Sequence record: MZ443769.1
DNA length: 64,000 bases
Strand: one strand, 5' to 3'
The translations under genes and the position numbers were made by a program. The notes beneath the pieces are model-generated. The model had not been told where the DNA came from. It worked only from the letters and a program-made list of their open reading frames with translations, and searched no databases. Positions 12,641 through 32,544 of this stretch are shown in pieces. How positions within the stretch are numbered: the first letter of the stretch is position 1; the number at the start of each line of letters is the position of its first letter.

Positions 12641-13411
12641 ATGAGCAATGTAGATAAAACAATGCCTCAAGGTAAGTGGGAATTCAACGAGCCTGTTGCT
12701 GCTGTGTTTGATAACATGCTGGCCAACTCGATTCCTTCTTATGACCGTATGCGTGACCTGACGTTTCGTCTGGGTAAACGTTTCGTGACACCTGGCTCAG
12801 CGATTGTTGATCTCGGTGCATCACTCGGTCGTGCTATCGAACCATTCTGTGAACACTTCGGTCCGTACATGTATCATCATGCAGCAGACCGTCCTGAACC
12901 AGATTCTGAAACAGGCAATCTCTATTCGCTGTATGAGACTGCTCCTGCAATGCGTGAGCGTCTCGCACAGAACGCAGTGTTGAACGCAGCCGAAGCGAAA
13001 CTCGAATCAGAATCGCTTGTGGACGTTGATACGTTCCGTTTCAGTGAGCAAGTCGAATGCTCTTTGATTCTCAGCGTGTTAACTTTGCAGTTCACTCCGA
13101 TTGAACACCGTCAGCACATTCTGGAAAAGGTCTATGACTCTTTGCAGTCTGGTGGTGCATTCATTCTCGTTGAGAAAGTTCTCGGGGATGATAATTATCT
13201 GGACAAGCTGCTGGTAGATACCTACTACAGCATGAAAGGTGATAACGGTTATTCACAAGAAAGCATTGCGACTAAGCGCAAGTCACTCGAAGGTGTTCTC
13301 GTTCCAGTGAAAGCCGCGTGGAATGAAGAACTGCTCCGTAAAGCGGGCTTCAATCGCGTCGAATGTTTCTATCGCGATCTCAACTTTGCAGGTTGGATTG
13401 CTGTTAAATAA
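12641..13411 (+). CDS. cmoA: carboxy-S-adenosyl-L-methionine synthase (CmoA family)
   Basis: WEFNEPVAAVFDNMLANSIPSY, VDLGASLG, LTLQF, GGAFILVEK, NGYSQESIATKRKSLE and LLRKAGF...FYRDLNF align along the full length with CmoA. Confidence 0.9.
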   Translation: MSNVDKTMPQGKWEFNEPVAAVFDNMLANSIPSYDRMRDLTFRLGKRFVTPGSAIVDLGASLGRAIEPFCEHFGPYMYHHAADRPEPDSETGNLYSLYETAPAMRERLAQNAVLNAAEAKLESESLVDVDTFRFSEQVECSLILSVLTLQFTPIEHRQHILEKVYDSLQSGGAFILVEKVLGDDNYLDKLLVDTYYSMKGDNGYSQESIATKRKSLEGVLVPVKAAWNEELLRKAGFNRVECFYRDLNFAGWIAVK

Positions 13412-13436
13412 ATCTGTAAACAGTAGAGGTTAGAGC

Positions 13437-14309
13437 ATGAGTTCTACAGCGGTCATACGCGAGAAAGTTCGCTCGGCATTATTTGCGAGTCATAACAAGC
13501 CTGTCGATATGCGACAAGCGTTGATGGACACTTTGAGTTGGATTCCGAAAGAAGACCAAGTTACTGTGTTCATGTCGGGTGGCATTGATAGTCATGCTTG
13601 CTTGTTTGCTTGCATCGACCTCGGCCTCAAAGTTAACGTGCTGTCGTTCACACTCGACTCACACGAAAGCTCTGACTTCAAGGCAGCGAGACACGCAGCC
13701 GAAGTTTTCGACCTTGACTTCACGCCGATCGTTCTTCCAACGAACGAAGCCCATCTGAAAAGCTGGGTACGTTTCGCAGTACACAAGCTCGGGCTCACGA
13801 ACAAAAGTGAGATCGAATGTTCTTGGCCGCTGTACACCGCAATCCGTCATCTCGAAGGAAAGACCAAACATATCGTACTCGGTCTTGGCGGCGACTCGTA
13901 CTTCTTAATGGCAAAGAGCGCTTCGATGCACTGCAAAGACTTAGTGTTAGAGCAACGTCGAAAAGCTACGCGCCGTGTGCTGTCTCAGAACGTTCTCGTT
14001 AAGCGTGAAGCTTTTGCTCGTGGTATCTACGCGCATCTTCCGTACTTCGAGTTCGGCCGCACTTACGCAGAGCTGCAAATGGAAACCGACTTTAAAAAGA
14101 TCAACAGTCCGCAGAAGTCGTTTTACAATCAGGCATTCCCTGAGTATCGCAAGCGCTGTAAAGTACGCGGTCACCAAAACTTCCAGCTGGGAGACACTAA
14201 CATTAGCGGCATCTTTAGCGATGTGTTGTTGAAGTCCGACTGGAACACAAGAAACTTGAAAGCAATCGTTGGCGTATACAATGACGTTGCATCAGGAATC
14301 TGTAAATAG
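13437..14309 (+). CDS. asparagine-synthetase-like ATP-dependent amide ligase lacking the glutaminase domain
   Basis: PP-loop FMSGGIDS, SDFKAARHAA, IVLGLGGDSYF; 290 aa with no N-terminal Ntn domain. Confidence 0.82.
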   Translation: MSSTAVIREKVRSALFASHNKPVDMRQALMDTLSWIPKEDQVTVFMSGGIDSHACLFACIDLGLKVNVLSFTLDSHESSDFKAARHAAEVFDLDFTPIVLPTNEAHLKSWVRFAVHKLGLTNKSEIECSWPLYTAIRHLEGKTKHIVLGLGGDSYFLMAKSASMHCKDLVLEQRRKATRRVLSQNVLVKREAFARGIYAHLPYFEFGRTYAELQMETDFKKINSPQKSFYNQAFPEYRKRCKVRGHQNFQLGDTNISGIFSDVLLKSDWNTRNLKAIVGVYNDVASGICK

Positions 14310-14316: not shown

Positions 14317-14375
14317 AGTAAGCACTGATAATCAGTCTGCTCTTAACATAAACCCAAATCCTTAAGGAGCGCATC

Positions 14376-14525
14376 ATGCGTCATACCGACCCAGCAGTAC
14401 GTTTTAACGATCCAGCCATCACTGACCCAGCAGCCCGTTTCGATCCGGCCGACCCTGCTGATCCAGCAATCGGTTTCGATCCGGCTGACCCAGCAGATCC
14501 TGCTGACCCGGCTGCTCGCTTCTAA
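14376..14525 (+). CDS. 49-aa Asp-Pro-Ala repeat peptide (absent from ORF track)
   Basis: AAGGAG RBS at 14364; MRHTDPAVRFNDPAITDPAARFDPADPADPAIGFDPADPADPADPAARF; synonymous codons vary between repeats; terminator follows. Confidence 0.85.
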   Translation: MRHTDPAVRFNDPAITDPAARFDPADPADPAIGFDPADPADPADPAARF

Positions 14526-14541
14526 TAGCGAAACTTAATAC

Positions 14542-14571
14542 AAGGGGGCTGCTCATTGCAGTCCCTTTTTA
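14542..14571 (+). terminator. intrinsic terminator after the DPA peptide
   Basis: GGGGCTGC-TCATT-GCAGTCCC then TTTTT. Confidence 0.8.
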
Positions 14572-14593
14572 CTTTCCTGTTGAGGAACGTGCT

Positions 14594-15232
14594 ATGTCTT
14601 TTGAGCTTGTAAACATTCTGCCGATACTGTCGCAATCAACTACAGTTCATCGTGCAGCCGACGGCACTGATGTTCACATCGTCCGAAACTTCTTCACACA
14701 TACGGAATGCGAAGCACTAATCGCTGAGGGCATTCAGTATCTCGAACCGAGCCGTGTTGGTGGACCGAACGATACAACTAAGATCGATAAAACAGTTCGC
14801 TCGTCCTCTACTGCGATGTTAAGCGAAGTATCTCAACACCCTGCTGTACTCGAAGCTATTCGTCGCATTGATGACGCATACGGTTACCCACATCTGTTCA
14901 GCAACCCGCTGCAACTCAATCGCTATCAAGTCGGTGAAGAGTTCGTAGCGCATCACGACTGGCATGACCCTGTTCGCCAGCATGATCGTATTCAACGTGA
15001 AGGCCAACGCACTTGGACCTTCTTGATGTACCTCAACGATGACTTCGAAGGAGGTCAGACTGAATTCCCGTTGATGGATCTCACAGTAACTCCTGAGCGC
15101 GGTATGCTTGTTCTGTGGAACAACTTGCTTGTTGACGGTTCAGTCAATGAGACAACGCTACACGCATCGAAGCCTGTAACGTCAGGTACGAAGTTCATGA
15201 TGACCAAGTGGTTTAAGAACAAAGTGCTGTGA
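14594..15232 (+). CDS. 2OG-Fe(II) oxygenase, prolyl-4-hydroxylase family
   Basis: FFTHTECEALI, VRSSSTAML, LQLNRYQVGEEFVAHHD (HxD), TFLMYLND..EGGQTEFP, TLHASKPVTSGTKFMMTKW. Confidence 0.9.
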   Translation: MSFELVNILPILSQSTTVHRAADGTDVHIVRNFFTHTECEALIAEGIQYLEPSRVGGPNDTTKIDKTVRSSSTAMLSEVSQHPAVLEAIRRIDDAYGYPHLFSNPLQLNRYQVGEEFVAHHDWHDPVRQHDRIQREGQRTWTFLMYLNDDFEGGQTEFPLMDLTVTPERGMLVLWNNLLVDGSVNETTLHASKPVTSGTKFMMTKWFKNKVL

Positions 15233-16684: not shown

Positions 16685-17183
16685 ATGAAACAACAACTGC
16701 TTGATCGTGGCTTCGACCACGAACGATATCATTGCTGGTTAAGTGAGACACAGATGACTGTGCCTCTATTCGGATTTGATCGTCAACTTCATGGCGTTCA
16801 AGTCTACACACCAGACGCACCGAAACAAACGTCGAATCCGAAAGATGCTCGTTACTTCACGCGCACGTTCGGTGGCAAGCAGTTGGTGTGGGGAACAGAA
16901 ATTGAACCTATACGGGTCGACCGTATTCTTAACTGAGTCCGTGTTCAAGGCATGTGCTGTTCATCGTCTTGGACTCAACGCTTGGTCTGTATTAGGTTCT
17001 AATGTCAACGATGCTCTGTACCTTCAACTGCAACTGCTTGGCCTGAGATTTGTCTGTCTCGGTGATGCTGATAAAGCGGGTGAAGAGTTCAGTCAAACGT
17101 TTGGTCTTGGTGCAGTATCAAAAGACCTTGACGAAATGACTGACGCAGAGCTACTGGATTTAACTCGTCCTTTCTTGAGGTAA
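16685..17183 (+). pseudogene. TOPRIM-domain (primase-like) gene split by a +1 frameshift near 16898-16901
   Basis: Frame of 16685 gives VPLFGFDRQLHGVQVYTP..RYFT..VWGTE; frame of 16776 continues VFLTESVFKA..LGS..CLGDADKAG..KDLDE. Confidence 0.75.
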
Positions 17184-18607: not shown

Positions 18608-19450
18608 ATGACAGCAATAAGCCCAATCCGATATCAAGGAAATAAGCGCAGCCTAATACCCTTGATTTTAGAGAACGCTCCTTCTGTTAAGGACTGTTCT
18701 CGTTTCATTGATGCGTTCGGCGGTAGTGGTACTGTCTGCTTGAATATGCCTCAACCGTTTCGCGTGTACAACGAACTCAGTCCTCAGGTATTTGAGATCG
18801 TCAAGATGCTGTCAGAGCAAGACCCGAAGAAAACTCTGTCGCAGATTAAGCGTGTTGTGAAACACTGGGCGCTGACGAACAGTAGTGAAACGAGTTACGA
18901 CGACTTCCGTGTTCACGTCCAGAAGAAGCGTACCCCGTTACTGCATTACGTTGCACACAGACACTCACACTCCAACATGTTGCGCTTCAATCAGCAAGGC
19001 ATATACAATGTGCCATTCGGTGCTCGTGGTCTGATTGGAAAGTTCGATGAACTTGAGCATGAGCTTGTGCAATTCCATGAGCGTATGCAAGGTGTGCATC
19101 TGACTAACCTGCGCTACAATGACTTGCTGGGTAAAGTGCATAACCAGCTTAACAGCAACACGTTCTGCTACTTCGACCCACCGTATCTGGCAAGTGGTGC
19201 AATGCAATACGGGAAGTGGACTGAGCGCAACGAGCGTAACCTGCTTTCGATGCTGGAACATCTGACTCGCCTTGGCGTTCCGTGGATGTTGAGCAACGTT
19301 GTCGAGCACAGACACTTCAAGAACGATTTGTTGAAACGTTGGTTGAAACGTTGTGCAACGACCGTGCTCTATCCGAATAAAACATACGCACTGGCAAATG
19401 GTCAAGGCGGTTCACACGGTACTGTTGAAATTTTAGCAATGAACTATTAA
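18608..19450 (+). CDS. dam: DNA adenine methyltransferase (Dam/T4-Dam family)
   Basis: SPIRYQGNKRSL, FIDAFGGSGTV, FCYFDPPY. Confidence 0.9.
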   Translation: MTAISPIRYQGNKRSLIPLILENAPSVKDCSRFIDAFGGSGTVCLNMPQPFRVYNELSPQVFEIVKMLSEQDPKKTLSQIKRVVKHWALTNSSETSYDDFRVHVQKKRTPLLHYVAHRHSHSNMLRFNQQGIYNVPFGARGLIGKFDELEHELVQFHERMQGVHLTNLRYNDLLGKVHNQLNSNTFCYFDPPYLASGAMQYGKWTERNERNLLSMLEHLTRLGVPWMLSNVVEHRHFKNDLLKRWLKRCATTVLYPNKTYALANGQGGSHGTVEILAMNY

Positions 19451-29664: not shown

Positions 29665-29674
29665 ACTGTAAATA
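29665..29674 (+). promoter_or_regulatory. motif I putative promoter for the ParB-C5 transferase pair
   Basis: ACTGTAAATA intergenic, 44 nt before ATG. Confidence 0.55.
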
Positions 29675-29708: not shown

Positions 29709-30413
29709 ATGGCAAAAATTGCTAAAGCAAAAGCAAAGGACGGGAAAAAGAAAGGCGCTATGGCTATTGATTTGAAATCTTTCAAGTCGGCTAAACAGCT
29801 TAAAGGCGCTAAGTACAATCCACGTTTCATTACAGACAGTCGCTTGAGCGCACTCGAAAGTTCGTTGGGTAGCTTCGGTGACTTGTCTGGCATCGTGTTT
29901 AACAACAGCGTCAGTTCAGGCGTTCTTATCTCCGGTCACCAGCGTCTCAAGTCAATCAACGATTGGGAAACGCGCATCGAACTCCAGCCTACTTCTGACA
30001 AGTACGGTACAGTCGCTTTGGGTTACGTTCATGCAACGCATCCGAAGTCGAGCAAGACGATTAGCATTCCTCTGCGTATCGTAAACTGGAACGATAAGAA
30101 AGCCGAGTACGCTGCGAACATTGCTGCGAATGCGCACGGCGGTGAGTTCGATAACAAGAAGCTTGCGAATCTGGTTGAGAAACTTGACCTGACTTCTATC
30201 AAGCCTCAACTGCTCGGACTCGACCCGCTGGAAATCCGTGGTCTGCAACAGAAGCTGAAATCACAAGCACTTGTTGAAGGCGAGAAACGCGCAGGCAAAA
30301 CTACTGGTCAGATGAACGGTAGTACGGGCGCATTCAAAGAATACACACCAGATGAAGTCGGCGATAAGCTGTCATGCACCTGCCCACGCTGTGGATTTAA
30401 GTTCGAGGGATAA
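29709..30413 (+). CDS. ParB/Srx-like N-terminal domain protein with C-terminal Zn knuckle
   Basis: LKGAKYNPRFI..LESSL..FG..LISGHQRL..ANIAAN; ends CTCPRCGFKF. Confidence 0.8.
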   Translation: MAKIAKAKAKDGKKKGAMAIDLKSFKSAKQLKGAKYNPRFITDSRLSALESSLGSFGDLSGIVFNNSVSSGVLISGHQRLKSINDWETRIELQPTSDKYGTVALGYVHATHPKSSKTISIPLRIVNWNDKKAEYAANIAANAHGGEFDNKKLANLVEKLDLTSIKPQLLGLDPLEIRGLQQKLKSQALVEGEKRAGKTTGQMNGSTGAFKEYTPDEVGDKLSCTCPRCGFKFEG

Positions 30414-30414
30414 T

Positions 30415-32544
30415 ATGATCATCAAGCCGCCTACAATGAAAGAGATCAACGCGCAAGACAACAATTGGCGTGGCATGAGCTTCTTCGCAGGCTGTGGTGG
30501 TTCTTCTACCGGTCTCAAATGGGCCGGTATTAACATCATCTTGAGTAATGAGTTCGTAGACGTGGCGCGTGAGTCTTATCAAGCGAACCACCCATCTACG
30601 TTAGTTCTCCCTCACGATATCCGTCGTCTCGACCCGAAGAAGATTATGCAGCACTTCGGGATGGGTAAGGGTGAACTTGATTTCCTCGATGGTAGCCCAC
30701 CATGCTTCACTGAGAACACTCTGATTCACACTGCTGAGGGGATGAAGTTCATCTCTGATGTTAATGTCGGCGACATGGCAATGACTTCTGTTGGTCGTTA
30801 TCATGAAGTGTACGATACTATGGTGCGTCCTTATGTTGGTACGATGCACAAGATCGAAACACTGCTCGGCGCGAATAACGCAACGCCTGAACATCCGTTC
30901 TTCATTCGCCGCGTTCAACCTACCGGCTTGTGGTCTGAACCTTTCTGGTGTGATGCGAAAGATGTACAAGAAGGTGATTTACTCTCAACACCTCGAACAA
31001 CTCCTGACATGGGTGCTGACGCTTATCATGGTCAAATGTCATTGCTGACGCCTGTCATTCAGAGCTGGGTAACTTTCCCTGAGTTCTGGTGGGCTATCGG
31101 TCATTGGTGTGCGCACGGTACTCTTGAAGTTGTGCAGGGTGTCGATGTTGTTAGCTTCGAATCGCACACAGCTCAGGAAAACGATCTGATTGAGCAGGTG
31201 TTTGATGTTCTGAAAATCAGTAGCATCAACAGCGTAGACACAACCGTTGACCAGCGCAAGACGTATCGCGTTGTCATGGATTCAGAACTGTTTGCGTTCC
31301 TGAGCAAGTTCGTGGCACAGGGTAAGAACAACCTGTCTCGTCGTCTGCCGTCGATGATCTTCCACTTAGCTACTGAACTGAAACAGCAATTCATTCTCGG
31401 CTATCTCGGTCGTGACTACGTTAGTGCAATGGGCATGAGCCAGTTGATTAGCACAGACAACCGTCGCTTCCTCACTGAAATGAATTACCTGACGTGCTCT
31501 GCATTCAACAGACCTCTGTTCGATGGTATGTTGTTCTCTGATGTGAACTACGGTTCAGCGCTTACGCCTCGTGATCGCAATCAGAAGAAAGAGCATGTCG
31601 GCTATCTGCTGCTGCAAGATGAAAACAATTTCTTCTACGAGTTCAACGATAACGATCCACATCTGTGGGTTCAAGTGATTGAGAACCTAGCGTATCAGAC
31701 AACCTGTGACGTGTACAACTTCTCGGTCAGTGAAGACGAGACGTATGTGGCGAACAGCATTGTCGTGCATAACTGCAAAGGCTTCTCGACTGCTGGCGTG
31801 AAAGAAGAAGGTTGGGGTAAAGAAGTCAAGTACAGCGAGAACAAGAAACAGCAGGTTGATGACCTGTTCGATCAGTATTGCCGTATGATTAGTGGCTTCC
31901 AGCCTAAAGTGTTCACAGCGGAAAACGTCAGTGGTCTTGTGAAAGGATCTTCTAAAGGTTACTTCCTTGAGATCATGAAAACGTTTGACGAGCTTGGCTA
32001 CTATGTCAAAGCACCGTTGATTAACAGTGCATGGCTTGGTGTTCCACAGTCGCGTGAGCGTATCATCTTCATGGGTGTGCGTAAAGACGTTGCACATGCG
32101 TTGGGATATCGCTCAATCGGTACTGCTGTGCCTGCTGTCGTGCCTGCTTCAAGCATGGCTGTGCTTGCTGATGCTCTGCCTAACATCCTGCGATACAAAT
32201 CGGCTGAGAAAGATATCATCAAGTATAAGCCCGCGATGAACGGACCTATGCCTACGATAACTGCTGCTGATGCGATTGCGTATGAGACGGCACGATTCTC
32301 TTCTGCTGGATTTATCGAGGACAACAAGGGCATTCGTCGTAAGCTTACGATTGATGAACTGAAAGTTGTTTCCGGTCTGCCTGCTGATTACAAGCTGGTC
32401 GGTAAGTTCGAACAACAGTGGGAACGTCTCGGTCGTATCTGCGTACCTCACATGACTCATGCTGCTGCGACTGCGTTGATCAATCATATTCTTGTGCCTT
32501 ACGCCAAGAAGAAGAAACAGAAACCGGGCGCTCTCTTCCGCTAG
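30415..32544 (+). CDS. C5 cytosine transferase (DNMT fold), intein-containing; candidate carboxymethyltransferase (CmoX-like)
   Basis: Motif I FFAGCGG, IV GSPP|C, VI ENVSGL, VIII VPQSRERI, IX RKLTIDEL, X LGRICVP (Arg instead of Asn); ATG at 30415 follows the ParB stop. Confidence 0.88.
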   Translation: MIIKPPTMKEINAQDNNWRGMSFFAGCGGSSTGLKWAGINIILSNEFVDVARESYQANHPSTLVLPHDIRRLDPKKIMQHFGMGKGELDFLDGSPPCFTENTLIHTAEGMKFISDVNVGDMAMTSVGRYHEVYDTMVRPYVGTMHKIETLLGANNATPEHPFFIRRVQPTGLWSEPFWCDAKDVQEGDLLSTPRTTPDMGADAYHGQMSLLTPVIQSWVTFPEFWWAIGHWCAHGTLEVVQGVDVVSFESHTAQENDLIEQVFDVLKISSINSVDTTVDQRKTYRVVMDSELFAFLSKFVAQGKNNLSRRLPSMIFHLATELKQQFILGYLGRDYVSAMGMSQLISTDNRRFLTEMNYLTCSAFNRPLFDGMLFSDVNYGSALTPRDRNQKKEHVGYLLLQDENNFFYEFNDNDPHLWVQVIENLAYQTTCDVYNFSVSEDETYVANSIVVHNCKGFSTAGVKEEGWGKEVKYSENKKQQVDDLFDQYCRMISGFQPKVFTAENVSGLVKGSSKGYFLEIMKTFDELGYYVKAPLINSAWLGVPQSRERIIFMGVRKDVAHALGYRSIGTAVPAVVPASSMAVLADALPNILRYKSAEKDIIKYKPAMNGPMPTITAADAIAYETARFSSAGFIEDNKGIRRKLTIDELKVVSGLPADYKLVGKFEQQWERLGRICVPHMTHAAATALINHILVPYAKKKKQKPGALFR
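30703..31773 (+). mobile_element. 357-aa intein with degenerate LAGLIDADG endonuclease, inserted before the catalytic Cys
   Basis: Starts CFTENTLI, block B ATPEHPF, ends ANSIVVHN with +1 Cys; blocks C and E read AIGHWCAHG and FILGYLGRD. Confidence 0.93.

What the first reader, a model, noticed from the sequence alone, without database searches (positions are those of the whole stretch)
14376..14525. Unannotated 49-aa peptide with ten Asp-Pro-Ala repeats, its own promoter motifs, RBS and terminator
Seen: MRHTDPAVRFNDPAITDPAARFDPADPADPAIGFDPADPADPADPAARF. Blocks end in DPAxxF (VRF, ARF, IGF, ARF). Codons vary (gac cca gca, gat ccg gcc, gac cct gct, and others), so the repeat is held at protein level rather than being a DNA slippage repeat. 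It has an AAGGAG RBS, both promoter-like motifs upstream and a terminator downstream, consistent with a dedicated abundant transcript. It lies between an Asn-synthetase-like ligase and a prolyl-4-hydroxylase-like gene. Inference: a polyproline-II-like substrate or multi-core precursor. I do not recognise it from any described family.
Basis: partly seen in the sequence, partly recalled or inferred. Interest (0 to 1): 0.88.

Follow-up and report, generated by a model that had tools for sequence, protein, structure and literature searches.

The report
Phage proline-repeat peptide, hydroxylase, ligase cassette
The 49-residue Asp-Pro-Ala repeat ORF is a real, conserved phage micro-gene that always travels with a prolyl 4-hydroxylase and an amide ligase from the recently discovered carboxymethyl-cytosine DNA-modification pathway, so it is probably a purpose-made enzyme substrate and possibly a peptide-derived building block for modifying phage DNA.

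Summary
The ORF at 14376-14525 is exactly as described: ten DPA units, varied codons, an AAGGAG RBS and a strong terminator. It is not unannotated, because GenBank calls it a hypothetical protein in Erwinia jumbo phages pEp_SNUABM_52 and Y3.

The neighbouring "Asn synthetase" is a homolog of CmoY, the ligase that amidates 5-carboxymethylcytosine (5cxmC) in phage DNA. CmoA lies just upstream, and a CmoX interrupted by an intein lies 16 kb downstream.

In 12 divergent phage lineages one long-branched CmoY clade is followed by a 22-49 aa peptide. In 11 of them a collagen-type prolyl 4-hydroxylase (P4H) comes next; the twelfth contig ends inside the peptide. The repeat unit varies (DPA, DPEMTF, EPE, NPER, NPEI, APEI). 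In the 11 complete peptides every proline (79 of 79) has an adjacent Asp or Glu. All ten genes checked for signals have an RBS and a terminator before the P4H.

This P4H subtype and the peptide never occur without the ligase. The three genes replaced another CmoY type as one cassette.

Best reading: a dedicated, abundantly made P4H substrate that works with the ligase, most likely as a hydroxyproline-bearing partner for 5cxmC amidation. One lineage keeps the trio under purifying selection without detectable CmoA or CmoX, so a self-contained peptide-modifying (RiPP-like) module remains a strong rival. No publication describes the peptide.

The parts
12641..13411 (+). CmoA homolog (carboxy-SAM synthase)
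   Evidence: 28% identity to S-B43 SpCmoA, E 2e-22. RefSeq annotates it as a tRNA methyltransferase and GenBank as a carboxy-S-adenosyl-L-methionine synthase in Y3. 88% identical to the Alexandravirus CmoA.
13414..13422 (+). Phage promoter-like motif CTGTAAACA before the ligase gene
   Evidence: One of 12 + strand copies of CTGTAAA-N-A; it lies 23 nt before the ligase ATG.
13437..14309 (+). Clade-B CmoY-type ATP-dependent amide ligase (PP-loop, AsnB synthetase-domain fold)
   Evidence: Pfam Asn_synthase/QueC. 27% identity to the characterised SpCmoY, E 6e-19. All universal CmoY motifs are kept. AF2 model pLDDT 87.6; best folds are AsnB, beta-lactam synthetase and carbapenam synthetase at TM about 0.65. 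It sits in the 100/100-supported clade that holds all peptide-bearing loci.
14298..14309 (+). Phage promoter-like motif ATCTGTAAATAG, overlapping the ligase stop codon
   Evidence: A related AAACTGTAAA-N-AC motif lies upstream of the peptide gene in Yoloswag, L303, L312 and L316.
14364..14369 (+). Shine-Dalgarno AAGGAG, 6 nt before the ATG
   Evidence: An SD is present 5-9 nt upstream in all 10 lineages examined.
14376..14525 (+). 49-aa Asp-Pro-Ala repeat peptide gene (pEaSNUABM52_00019)
   Evidence: Counterparts occupy the same slot in 11 other lineages.
14542..14573 (+). Intrinsic terminator (11-bp stem plus T-tract) between the peptide and the P4H
   Evidence: A hairpin plus T-tract (-19.6 to -39 kcal/mol) sits in this position in all 10 lineages examined.
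14594..15232 (+). Collagen-type prolyl 4-hydroxylase (2OG-FeII_Oxy_3)
   Evidence: Pfam E 1.6e-15. Profile against the PDB: B. anthracis P4H 1e-34, human C-P4H, Chlamydomonas and PBCV-1 P4H. H120, D122, H190 and K200 are invariant. It has no promoter motif of its own.
29709..30413 (+). ParB-like protein upstream of CmoX
   Evidence: Homologs lie next to CmoX in 6 other loci. The paper notes ParBc proteins in CmoX contigs. No Pfam hit here. Preceded by the promoter motif at 29666.
30352..32544 (+). CmoX homolog (DNA cytosine C5-carboxymethyltransferase signature), interrupted by an intein at 30703-31776
   Evidence: tblastn matches to PaBG and S-B43 CmoX in two pieces. It is a single 730-aa ORF. 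SPPC, and the Arg aligned with SpCmoX R350, are both conserved. The true start may be an internal ATG near 30415.

Best explanation
The ORF is a translated, separately and strongly expressed micro-gene. Its product is the dedicated repeat substrate of the prolyl 4-hydroxylase (P4H) encoded just downstream. The peptide, the P4H and the upstream clade-B CmoY ligase form one mobile three-gene cassette. That cassette arose inside the phage CmoA/CmoX/CmoY gene cluster, which makes 5-carboxymethylcytosine (5cxmC) in DNA and amidates it.

Proposed mechanism:
1. The phage promoter motif drives transcription of the peptide gene. The terminator after it lets only part of the transcripts reach the P4H gene, so there is much substrate and little enzyme. 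(Signals shown; dosing inferred.)
2. The P4H converts the prolines of the [Asp/Glu/Asn/Ala]-Pro-[Ala/Glu] repeats to 4-hydroxyproline. (Inferred from enzyme family, perfect co-occurrence and the invariance of proline.)
3. The ligase adenylates a -CH2-COOH carboxylate. In phages with CmoA and CmoX, this one included, that is 5cxmC on phage DNA. It then joins the carboxylate by an amide bond to an amine supplied by the hydroxylated peptide. I think the amine is more likely free hydroxyproline or a short hydroxyproline peptide released by host peptidases than the whole peptide. (Inferred; not shown.)

My confidence by layer: real conserved gene 0.95; P4H substrate 0.75; functional unit with the ligase 0.7; feeds 5cxmC amidation 0.35-0.4.
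For: Real gene. The slot between ligase and P4H holds a 22-49 aa proline/acid repeat ORF in 12 lineages whose ligases are 54-89% identical to this one. All 10 genes examined have an SD and a downstream terminator. The repeat is held at protein level while codons vary.

P4H substrate. The enzyme's best PDB matches are only peptidyl-prolyl 4-hydroxylases, and the His-x-Asp...His plus Lys residues are invariant. Proline is the only invariant repeat residue: 79 of 79 prolines have an adjacent Asp or Glu, and the residue after proline is always Ala or Glu. A viral P4H is reported to prefer prolines that precede alanine (PMC3634087). About 160 loci with other P4H relatives have no such peptide.

Unit with the ligase. 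CmoY, the peptide and the P4H are the only genes shared by all 11 complete loci, in the same order, while the surroundings differ. Relative to Alexandravirus, CmoA (88%) and gp21 (57%) are conserved, while CmoY (35%) plus peptide plus P4H replace CmoY alone. All peptide-bearing loci fall in one CmoY clade with 100/100 support and a stem of 2.38 substitutions per site. That clade is absent from 185,579 cellular genomes.

Link to 5cxmC. CmoY is experimentally a 5cxmC:glycine ligase, and the paper says other clusters have unidentified amines (PMC12783734). Clade B keeps every universal CmoY motif. It is the only CmoY in this genome, which also has CmoA and a CmoX with SPPC and the defining Arg. 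Eight of 11 lineages have CmoA and CmoX. In some the order is CmoX-CmoY-peptide-P4H-CmoA, with the CmoX stop overlapping the CmoY start, and some add a chorismate mutase that supplies prephenate. The same promoter motif precedes CmoY, the peptide and ParB-CmoX. A multi-copy substrate with no leader, protease or transporter fits a consumable feedstock.
Against: The RecA-context lineage (Sen-NF, L303, L312, L316) keeps the trio under strong purifying selection: pN 0.12-0.28 against saturated pS. Yet no CmoA, CmoX, ParB or chorismate mutase is detectable in 32 kb around it or in the 108.5-kb Sen-NF record, which retains every gene of 190 aa or more from that stretch. So the trio probably works without phage-made 5cxmC there.

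Three clade-B ligases (L103, L313, L314) lack the peptide and P4H but keep all clade-specific residues. The ligase's specificity therefore does not obviously depend on the peptide.

Nothing explains why an acidic residue must flank every proline if only hydroxyproline is needed. No peptidase is linked to the cassette. No chemical data exist on the DNA of these phages.
Confidence: 0.4

Rival explanations
1. Self-contained RiPP-like module. The clade-B ligase has switched from 5cxmC to the chemically similar -CH2-COOH of Asp (or the carboxylate of Glu) in the peptide. The P4H hydroxylates the prolines. The ligase adenylates the flanking acidic side chains or the C-terminus and amidates or cross-links them, for example to an amine or to the new hydroxyl. 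The product is a modified peptide with its own activity. The DNA pathway nearby reflects ancestry, not function.
For: The trio persists under purifying selection in a lineage with no detectable CmoA or CmoX. Every proline has an adjacent Asp or Glu, roughly one acid per proline across quite different repeat designs, as expected if proline and acid are both reaction sites. The ligase fold is that of AsnB, beta-lactam synthetase and carbapenam synthetase, which adenylate Asp-like carboxylates. Clade-specific changes add basic residues (R179, R208, H76, H145, H200; Asp/Glu to Trp at 110), which would suit an acidic ligand. More than half of published CmoX contigs have no ligase, so 5cxmC can be an end product.
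Against: Peptide-less clade-B ligases sit next to CmoA, and to CmoX in L103, and share the same clade-specific residues, which suggests the clade still works on DNA. The acid is Asp in some lineages and Glu in others, before or after the proline, and Asn is already encoded at that position in some. That is hard to reconcile with one precise side-chain chemistry or with simple amidation. There is no leader, protease, transporter or immunity gene. In most loci the cassette lies within CmoX-CmoY-...-CmoA gene strings.
Confidence: 0.25
2. The peptide and P4H are an independent two-gene module with no biochemical link to the ligase. A hydroxyproline-stiffened, polyanionic polyproline-II peptide acts directly on a host or phage target, for example as a nucleic-acid mimic, an inhibitor or an anti-defence factor. 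It sits beside CmoY only because it was inserted there once and then inherited.
For: Net charge is -3 to -10 with regularly spaced carboxylates. It has its own promoter motif and terminator. The ligase can exist without it. The repeat units turn over fast, as in arms-race proteins.
Against: The order ligase-peptide-P4H is kept through at least three different genomic contexts and through a three-gene cassette replacement. The peptide and this P4H subtype are never found away from a clade-B ligase. The spacing of the acids differs between lineages, every 3, 4 or 6 residues, which argues against mimicry of one fixed lattice.
Confidence: 0.15
3. The P4H's real substrates are the phage's four collagen-like (Gly-X-Y)23-34 tail-fibre proteins. 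The small ORF is incidental: a decoy, a regulator, or a leader-like element that controls P4H expression.
For: Four collagen-like proteins are encoded at about 67.0, 72.7, 73.3 and 74.8 kb of the genome. The closest solved homolog, B. anthracis P4H, is described as a collagen-type enzyme. The ORF and its terminator sit in the P4H's 5' region.
Against: The same four collagen-like proteins exist in Alexandravirus, which has no P4H and no peptide, so they do not track the enzyme, whereas the peptide tracks it perfectly. Their prolines are mostly in the X position (6-13 GP against 2-3 PG per protein). A leader or attenuator would not need protein-level conservation of Pro-acid repeats across ten or more designs.
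Confidence: 0.08
4. The ORF is not translated, and the region is a DNA or RNA element such as a repeat-containing intergenic spacer.
For: It is very short and of low complexity. Its G+C is 58.7% against 47.3% for the window. There are no proteomic data.
Against: SD, ATG and stop are conserved in frame in all lineages, although the nucleotide sequence and even the repeat unit change. Synonymous codon variation occurs within the repeats. At the DNA level only a weak 36-nt duplication is seen.
Confidence: 0.03

Closest known systems
CmoA/CmoX/CmoY 5-carboxymethylcytosine hypermodification of Synechococcus phage S-B43 (Yang et al., Nat Commun 2025, PMC12783734)
   Same: Homologs of all three enzymes are present in this phage. 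CmoX carries SPPC and the carboxylate-binding Arg. The ligase keeps all universal CmoY motifs. ParB-like neighbours match the published gene context.
   Different: The ligase belongs to a separate, long-branched clade, 27% identical to SpCmoY. It is followed by a ribosomal proline-repeat peptide and a P4H, neither of which the paper mentions. The amine substrate is unknown. One lineage has the ligase without detectable CmoA or CmoX.
Chlorella virus PBCV-1 prolyl 4-hydroxylase and its (Pro-Ala-Pro-Lys)n repeat substrates
   Same: A virus-encoded collagen-type P4H (PDB 5c5t matches at E 3e-20) that acts on short proline repeats, reportedly preferring prolines that precede alanine. The DPA repeat has the same Pro-Ala context.
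   Different: In PBCV-1 the repeats lie inside larger, basic proteins. Here the substrate is a dedicated 22-49 aa acidic peptide with its own promoter motif and terminator, in a bacteriophage, tied to an amide ligase.
RiPP precursor peptides, including multi-core precursors (cyanobactins, fungal dikaritins)
   Same: A short ribosomal peptide is encoded next to its modifying enzymes, with repeated units and a terminator that would raise the ratio of precursor to enzyme.
   Different: There is no leader or recognition sequence (only 3-5 residues before the first repeat), no protease, no transporter and no immunity gene. This enzyme pair (collagen-type P4H plus a 290-aa AsnB-type ligase) does not correspond, as far as I know, to any described RiPP class.
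Peptide-derived small molecules and cofactors (PqqA to PQQ, MftA to mycofactocin, pearlin scaffolds); from general knowledge
   Same: A tiny ribosomal peptide used as raw material for a non-peptide end product. This is the logic proposed here for a hydroxyproline donor.
   Different: The enzymes are unrelated. Here many identical units per peptide would be consumed, and the end product would be a DNA base modification.
Lasso peptide cyclases and other AsnB-like amide-forming enzymes (beta-lactam synthetase, carbapenam synthetase)
   Same: The same PP-loop synthetase fold (TM about 0.65) and the same chemistry: adenylation of a carboxylate followed by amide formation. Lasso cyclases act on Asp or Glu side chains of ribosomal peptides.
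   Different: It is 290 aa with no N-terminal domain. No leader peptidase or RRE is present. The first acidic residue lies at variable positions 4-8, and no conserved ring geometry is evident.
Microcin C-like peptide-carboxymethyl-cytidine antibiotic of Bacillus amyloliquefaciens (Serebryakova et al. 2016, cited as ref. 24 in PMC12783734)
   Same: It is the only known case where a ribosomal peptide and CmoA-derived carboxymethyl-cytosine chemistry meet in one gene cluster.
   Different: No MccB (ThiF-type) adenylyltransferase lies among the conserved genes. The peptides do not end in Asn. The context is phage DNA modification, not a secreted antibiotic.

Membership tests
5cxmC DNA hypermodification system (CmoA/CmoX/CmoY) | CmoA (carboxy-SAM synthase) homolog encoded by the phage | tested here: met
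   Window 12641-13411 is 28% identical to SpCmoA, E 2e-22.
5cxmC DNA hypermodification system (CmoA/CmoX/CmoY) | C5-MTase homolog with the SPPC motif and the Arg equivalent to SpCmoX R350 | tested here: met
   Window 30352-32544 has SPPC at the intein junction and 'ERLGR' aligned with R350. Function requires intein splicing, which was not tested.
5cxmC DNA hypermodification system (CmoA/CmoX/CmoY) | AMP-forming AsnS-like ligase (CmoY) homolog | tested here: met
   27% identity, E 6e-19 to SpCmoY. All universal CmoY motifs are conserved. AsnB synthetase fold.
5cxmC DNA hypermodification system (CmoA/CmoX/CmoY) | The amine ligated is glycine, as for SpCmoY | tested here: inconclusive
   This is a separate clade with 23 clade-specific invariant positions. 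The published pocket residues appear only in figures.
5cxmC DNA hypermodification system (CmoA/CmoX/CmoY) | 5cxmC or its amide present in virion DNA | not testable with these tools
   Needs nucleoside LC-MS of phage DNA.
5cxmC DNA hypermodification system (CmoA/CmoX/CmoY) | The peptide and P4H are always accompanied by CmoA and CmoX, as required if they serve only this pathway | tested here: not met
   The RecA-context lineage shows none in 32 kb or in the Sen-NF record. Caveat: no intact complete genome of that lineage was available.
RiPP precursor peptide | Short ribosomal ORF encoded next to candidate modifying enzymes | tested here: met
   Between the ligase and the P4H in 11 complete loci.
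RiPP precursor peptide | Leader or follower recognition sequence distinct from the core | tested here: not met
   Only 3-5 poorly conserved residues precede the first repeat, and no conserved flank exists.
RiPP precursor peptide | Dedicated protease and/or exporter in the cluster | tested here: not met
   No further gene is shared by all loci.
RiPP precursor peptide | Post-translational modification demonstrated | not testable with these tools
   Needs peptide mass spectrometry.
Substrate of a collagen-type prolyl 4-hydroxylase | The partner enzyme has the His-x-Asp...His triad with Lys at His+10 and matches P4H structures | tested here: met
   H120, D122, H190 and K200 are invariant. PDB 3itq/5hv0 E 1e-34, 7zsc, 2jig, 5c5t.
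Substrate of a collagen-type prolyl 4-hydroxylase | Repeated prolines in a context such enzymes accept (for example Pro-Ala) | tested here: met
   The residue after every proline is Ala or Glu. The PBCV-1 P4H preference is cited from PMC3634087.
Substrate of a collagen-type prolyl 4-hydroxylase | 4-hydroxyproline actually formed | not testable with these tools
   Needs an enzyme assay or peptidomics.
Lasso peptide system | Leader peptidase (B protein) or RRE, and a full-length cyclase of about 500-600 aa | tested here: not met
   The ligase is 290 aa and has only the synthetase domain. No such partner is among the conserved genes.
Microcin C-like peptide-nucleotide | C-terminal Asn on the peptide and an MccB-type adenylyltransferase | tested here: not met
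   The C-termini are F, A, M, I, L or E. No such gene is among those conserved across loci.

The most novel reading that the evidence does not exclude
A ribosomally made peptide, hydroxylated by a phage P4H, is the source of the group that the clade-B CmoY ligase attaches to 5-carboxymethylcytosine. The attached group could be free hydroxyproline, a short hydroxyproline peptide or the whole chain. Phage DNA would then carry a peptide-derived, hydroxyproline-containing hypermodification. This would be the first case of a gene-encoded peptide serving as feedstock for a DNA base modification.
Probability: 0.3. Interest if true: 0.95.

Novelty: new variant of a known kind. Interest (0 to 1): 0.8.

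Why it matters
The amines that phages attach to 5-carboxymethylcytosine are an explicitly open question in the paper that discovered the pathway. This cassette gives that question a concrete, testable candidate.

If the peptide feeds the ligase, it would link two fields that have not met: ribosomal peptide natural products and DNA hypermodification. It would also give a programmable, gene-encoded handle for decorating DNA.

If the trio is instead self-contained, it is a new phage-only class of modified peptide, made by a collagen-type prolyl hydroxylase and an AsnB-type ligase.

Either way it would give bacteriophage P4Hs, which are widespread and whose substrates are, as far as I know, mostly unknown, a first candidate dedicated substrate. 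It also shows that sub-50-codon phage ORFs can be core pathway parts.

Tried and rejected
- tblastn of the peptide against 50,697 phage records found only the phage itself and Y3, because the low-complexity filter masks the repeats.
It yielded no new family members.
- Peptide phmmer and profile searches of 5.8 billion proteins gave only two called relatives, since such short ORFs are rarely called. Walking from ligase homologs to their contigs was far more productive.
- The metagenome scan with the P4H profile returned only relatives of 40% identity or less, with no peptide and no CmoY.
- The genome-collection scan found no clade-B ligase in cellular genomes.
- The Sen-NF GenBank record could not show presence or absence of the peptide, because it is a concatenation of CDSs without intergenic DNA. 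The real contig L303 resolved this.
- A candidate methyltransferase motif in the RecA-context lineage (a 356-aa ORF with 'EIFAGAG') matched no Pfam family.
- The glycine-pocket residues of SpCmoY are given only in figure images, so pocket conservation could not be scored.
- Rejected: a nucleic-acid oxygenase role for the 2OG enzyme, because all the strong PDB matches are peptidyl-prolyl 4-hydroxylases (one weak 3-hydroxylase hit) and none is a nucleic-acid oxygenase.
- Rejected: a lasso-peptide or microcin C-type system (see the membership tests).
- Rejected: a 9-nt DNA slippage repeat.
- Rejected: the collagen-like fibres as the explanation for the P4H's distribution.
Full report

The window is the first 64 kb of Erwinia jumbo phage pEp_SNUABM_52 (MZ443769, genus Sasquatchvirus, 261 kb). 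It is 99.4% identical to phage vB_EamM_Y3 over the tested 1.9-kb stretch.

- It has ten Asp-Pro-Ala units encoded by eight different 9-mers, with balanced synonymous codons.
- No same-composition shuffle out of 100,000 gives more than five DPA units.
- Tandem Repeats Finder sees only a 36-nt unit repeated 2.2 times at 83% match. So the repeat is kept at the protein level.
- AAGGAG lies 6 nt before the ATG.
- An 11-bp-stem terminator follows at 14542-14568.

Two details of the finding are wrong or incomplete. First, the ORF is already annotated as a hypothetical protein in both public records. Second, there is no sigma-70-type promoter directly upstream. Instead there is one copy of a phage-specific motif. 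Its core, CTGTAAA-N-A, occurs 12 times on the coding strand and never on the other strand, nearly always 20-90 nt before a gene start. From memory, it resembles the T4 late promoter box.

**The neighbours are not what they first seem**

The upstream "Asn synthetase" matches Pfam only weakly. It recurs in many large phages next to a CmoA-like methyltransferase, and often next to a DNA cytosine methyltransferase.

A 2025 paper (PMC12783734) showed the following in Synechococcus phage S-B43:
- CmoA makes carboxy-SAM.
- CmoX, a C5-methyltransferase homolog, puts a carboxymethyl group on cytosine (5cxmC).
- CmoY, the Asn-synthetase-like enzyme, ligates glycine to that carboxyl with ATP.

The paper states that other CmoY clusters have different pockets and unidentified amine substrates.

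The window encodes homologs of all three:
- CmoA at 12641-13411.
- CmoY at 13437-14309.
- CmoX at 30352-32544, a single 730-aa ORF. A 358-residue intein sits exactly at the catalytic Cys of the SPPC motif. The Arg that defines carboxymethyltransferases is conserved.

A ParB-like gene precedes CmoX, as in the published contexts. The downstream 2OG oxygenase is a collagen-type prolyl 4-hydroxylase. Its profile matches Bacillus anthracis P4H at E 1e-34, then human, Chlamydomonas and PBCV-1 P4Hs, and no nucleic-acid oxygenase. The His-x-Asp...His triad and the Lys at His+10 are invariant.

**The peptide is a family**

Yoloswag, a different genus, has a 44-aa DPA peptide in the same slot. I walked out from ligase homologs in IMG/VR and in a 5.8-billion-protein collection. 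This gave twelve lineages in which a small ORF follows the ligase. In eleven a P4H comes next. The twelfth contig ends inside the peptide.

The repeat design changes completely between lineages:
- DPA blocks ending x-x-Phe (six lineages)
- FDPEMT/FDPEIT
- (D)EPEEPE...SKF
- NPER/NPE
- (NPEI)n
- (APEI)n
- EPSM (partial)

In the 11 complete peptides every one of the 79 prolines has an Asp or Glu next to it. The residue after proline is always Ala or Glu. Net charge is -3 to -10. Lysine is rare, so the N-terminus is the only amine common to all.

All ten genes examined have a Shine-Dalgarno sequence 5-9 nt upstream. All have a GC-rich hairpin plus T-tract between the peptide stop and the P4H start. 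The P4H has no promoter motif of its own. The layout therefore predicts much peptide and little enzyme.

**The three genes behave as one unit**

- Only CmoY, the peptide and the P4H are shared by all eleven complete loci, always in that order, while the surroundings differ. The orders seen are CmoA-CmoY-pep-P4H, CmoX-CmoY-pep-P4H-CmoA, and RecA-CmoY-pep-P4H.
- Compared with Alexandravirus the flanking genes are conserved (CmoA 88%, gp21 57%). Between them, a 35%-identical CmoY plus the peptide plus the P4H stand where Alexandravirus has CmoY alone.
- In a CmoY tree all twelve peptide-bearing loci fall in one clade with 100/100 support and a very long stem (2.38 substitutions per site). None of the six ligases outside it, including the characterised glycine ligase, has the peptide.
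- About 160 loci with other P4H relatives have neither the peptide nor CmoY.
- The clade is absent from 185,579 representative bacterial and archaeal genomes.

**Two observations cut against a simple story**

First, three clade members (L103, L313, L314) lack the peptide and P4H and carry other accessory genes: a DUF1611 enzyme in one, and an unknown 244-aa protein in the others. The 262-kb L103 contig has no P4H of this type anywhere. These ligases still keep every clade-specific residue.

Second, the "RecA-context" lineage (Salmonella phage Sen-NF and contigs L303, L312, L316) keeps the trio under strong purifying selection. Non-synonymous differences are 0.12-0.28 against saturated synonymous sites. 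Yet no CmoA, CmoX, ParB or chorismate mutase is detectable in 32 kb around the trio or in the 108.5-kb Sen-NF record.

That record is an artificial concatenation of CDSs. It has lost the peptide gene and all intergenic DNA. But it retains 18 of 18 genes of 190 aa or more from the 32-kb stretch, so a CmoA or CmoX would have been kept. I treat the absence as probable, not proven.

**Other checks**

- The ligase model (pLDDT 87.6) has the synthetase-domain fold of asparagine synthetase B, beta-lactam synthetase and carbapenam synthetase. These enzymes adenylate a -CH2-COOH type carboxylate and form an amide.
- Clade-specific invariant positions add basic residues and replace an outgroup Asp/Glu with Trp.
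- The rest of the genome has no second CmoY, no second P4H and no other DPA-like ORF.
- The genome does encode four collagen-like tail-fibre proteins. The same four are present in Alexandravirus, which has no P4H. They may be extra substrates, but they do not explain the enzyme's distribution.
- A viral P4H (PBCV-1) is reported to hydroxylate prolines preceding alanine most efficiently (PMC3634087). That is the same Pro-Ala context as here.

**Interpretation**

Shown by these analyses:
- a real, conserved small gene with conserved expression signals
- strict co-occurrence with one P4H subtype and one CmoY clade
- cassette behaviour of the three genes
- a full CmoA/CmoX/CmoY signature in this phage

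Inferred:
- The P4H hydroxylates the peptide's prolines.
- The ligase then uses the product.

I rank highest the model in which the hydroxylated peptide, or more likely hydroxyproline or a short hydroxyproline peptide released from it, is the amine that the ligase couples to 5cxmC. A small donor seems more likely than the whole chain because attaching a 3-5 kDa anionic peptide at many sites would rival the mass of the DNA. This model explains several features: the multi-copy design, the high-expression layout, the absence of a leader, protease or exporter, the invariance of proline alone, and the position inside CmoX-CmoY-...-CmoA gene strings.

It does not explain the RecA-context lineage, nor why each proline needs an acidic neighbour. 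The main rival explains both: a self-contained module in which the ligase works on the peptide's own Asp/Glu carboxylates. But that rival fits poorly with the peptide-less clade members that sit beside CmoA, and with the Asp/Glu/Asn variability. I found no publication describing the peptide or the trio.

**Verdict**

The finding is more interesting than first described, because it sits in a newly discovered DNA-modification pathway whose amine substrates are unknown. The mechanism is unresolved between two concrete, testable models.

Noticed in passing
window 30703-31776 (within ORF 30352-32544): A 358-residue intein (CFTENT...VVHN, followed by Cys) is inserted exactly at the catalytic Cys of the SPPC motif of the CmoX homolog. 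L095 has a similarly enlarged CmoX (765 aa). Yoloswag and the Alexandraviruses also match in two pieces.
   Followed up: partly
window, 12 sites: 7820, 10452, 13414, 14300, 15285, 15661, 18581, 21967, 29666, 34960, 38688, 43018: The motif (A/T)TCTGTAAATA occurs only on the + strand, nearly always 20-90 nt upstream of ORF starts. It is probably a phage promoter class. It precedes CmoY, the peptide, gp21, the DPPY methyltransferase and ParB-CmoX.
   Followed up: partly
PV359490.1 (loci L004, L305-L307): The GenBank record of Salmonella phage Sen-NF, labelled a complete genome, is a head-to-tail concatenation of CDSs with almost no intergenic DNA. It lacks most genes under about 190 aa, so it cannot be used for synteny or small-ORF work.
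   Followed up: yes
L095:2934-3200 and L310:4718-5161: A chorismate mutase (CM_2) is encoded between CmoX and CmoA in two lineages. It presumably boosts prephenate, the co-substrate of CmoA.
   Followed up: partly
L103:2899-3975; L313:6109-6843; L314:3569-4063: Clade-B ligases without the peptide carry other accessory genes. One is a DUF1611 protein between CmoA and CmoY. The others are an unknown roughly 244-aa protein after CmoY. These may define other amine substrates.
   Followed up: no
window 18608-19450: A DPPY-motif (N6-adenine type) methyltransferase, conserved a few kb from CmoA-CmoY in all related jumbo phages, is preceded by the same promoter motif. The 2025 paper found no adenine carboxymethyltransferase, so its cofactor preference may be worth testing.
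   Followed up: no
MZ443769 about 66.4-75.0 kb, - strand (L331): Four collagen-like (Gly-X-Y)23-34 proteins, annotated as tail-fibre or virion proteins in relatives, are conserved in Alexandravirus and Sen-NF. Their prolines lie mostly in the X position.
   Followed up: partly
L303:2519-4987, L312:3482-5965, L316:2497-4959: A RecA-like protein of 820-827 aa, with only a RecA_N Pfam hit, lies directly upstream of the trio in the RecA-context lineage. Its size suggests an intein or an added domain.
   Followed up: no
L094:2051-4001: In this IMG/VR contig the CmoX gene is split into pieces, with an insert of about 0.8 kb before its last 38 codons. This could be an intron, a mobile element or an assembly problem. 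The sister contig L093 has an intact CmoX.
   Followed up: no
window 16685-17183: The primase-like region is annotated as two short overlapping or adjacent CDSs, with different boundaries in Y3 and SNUABM_52. This could be a frameshift or a split gene.
   Followed up: no
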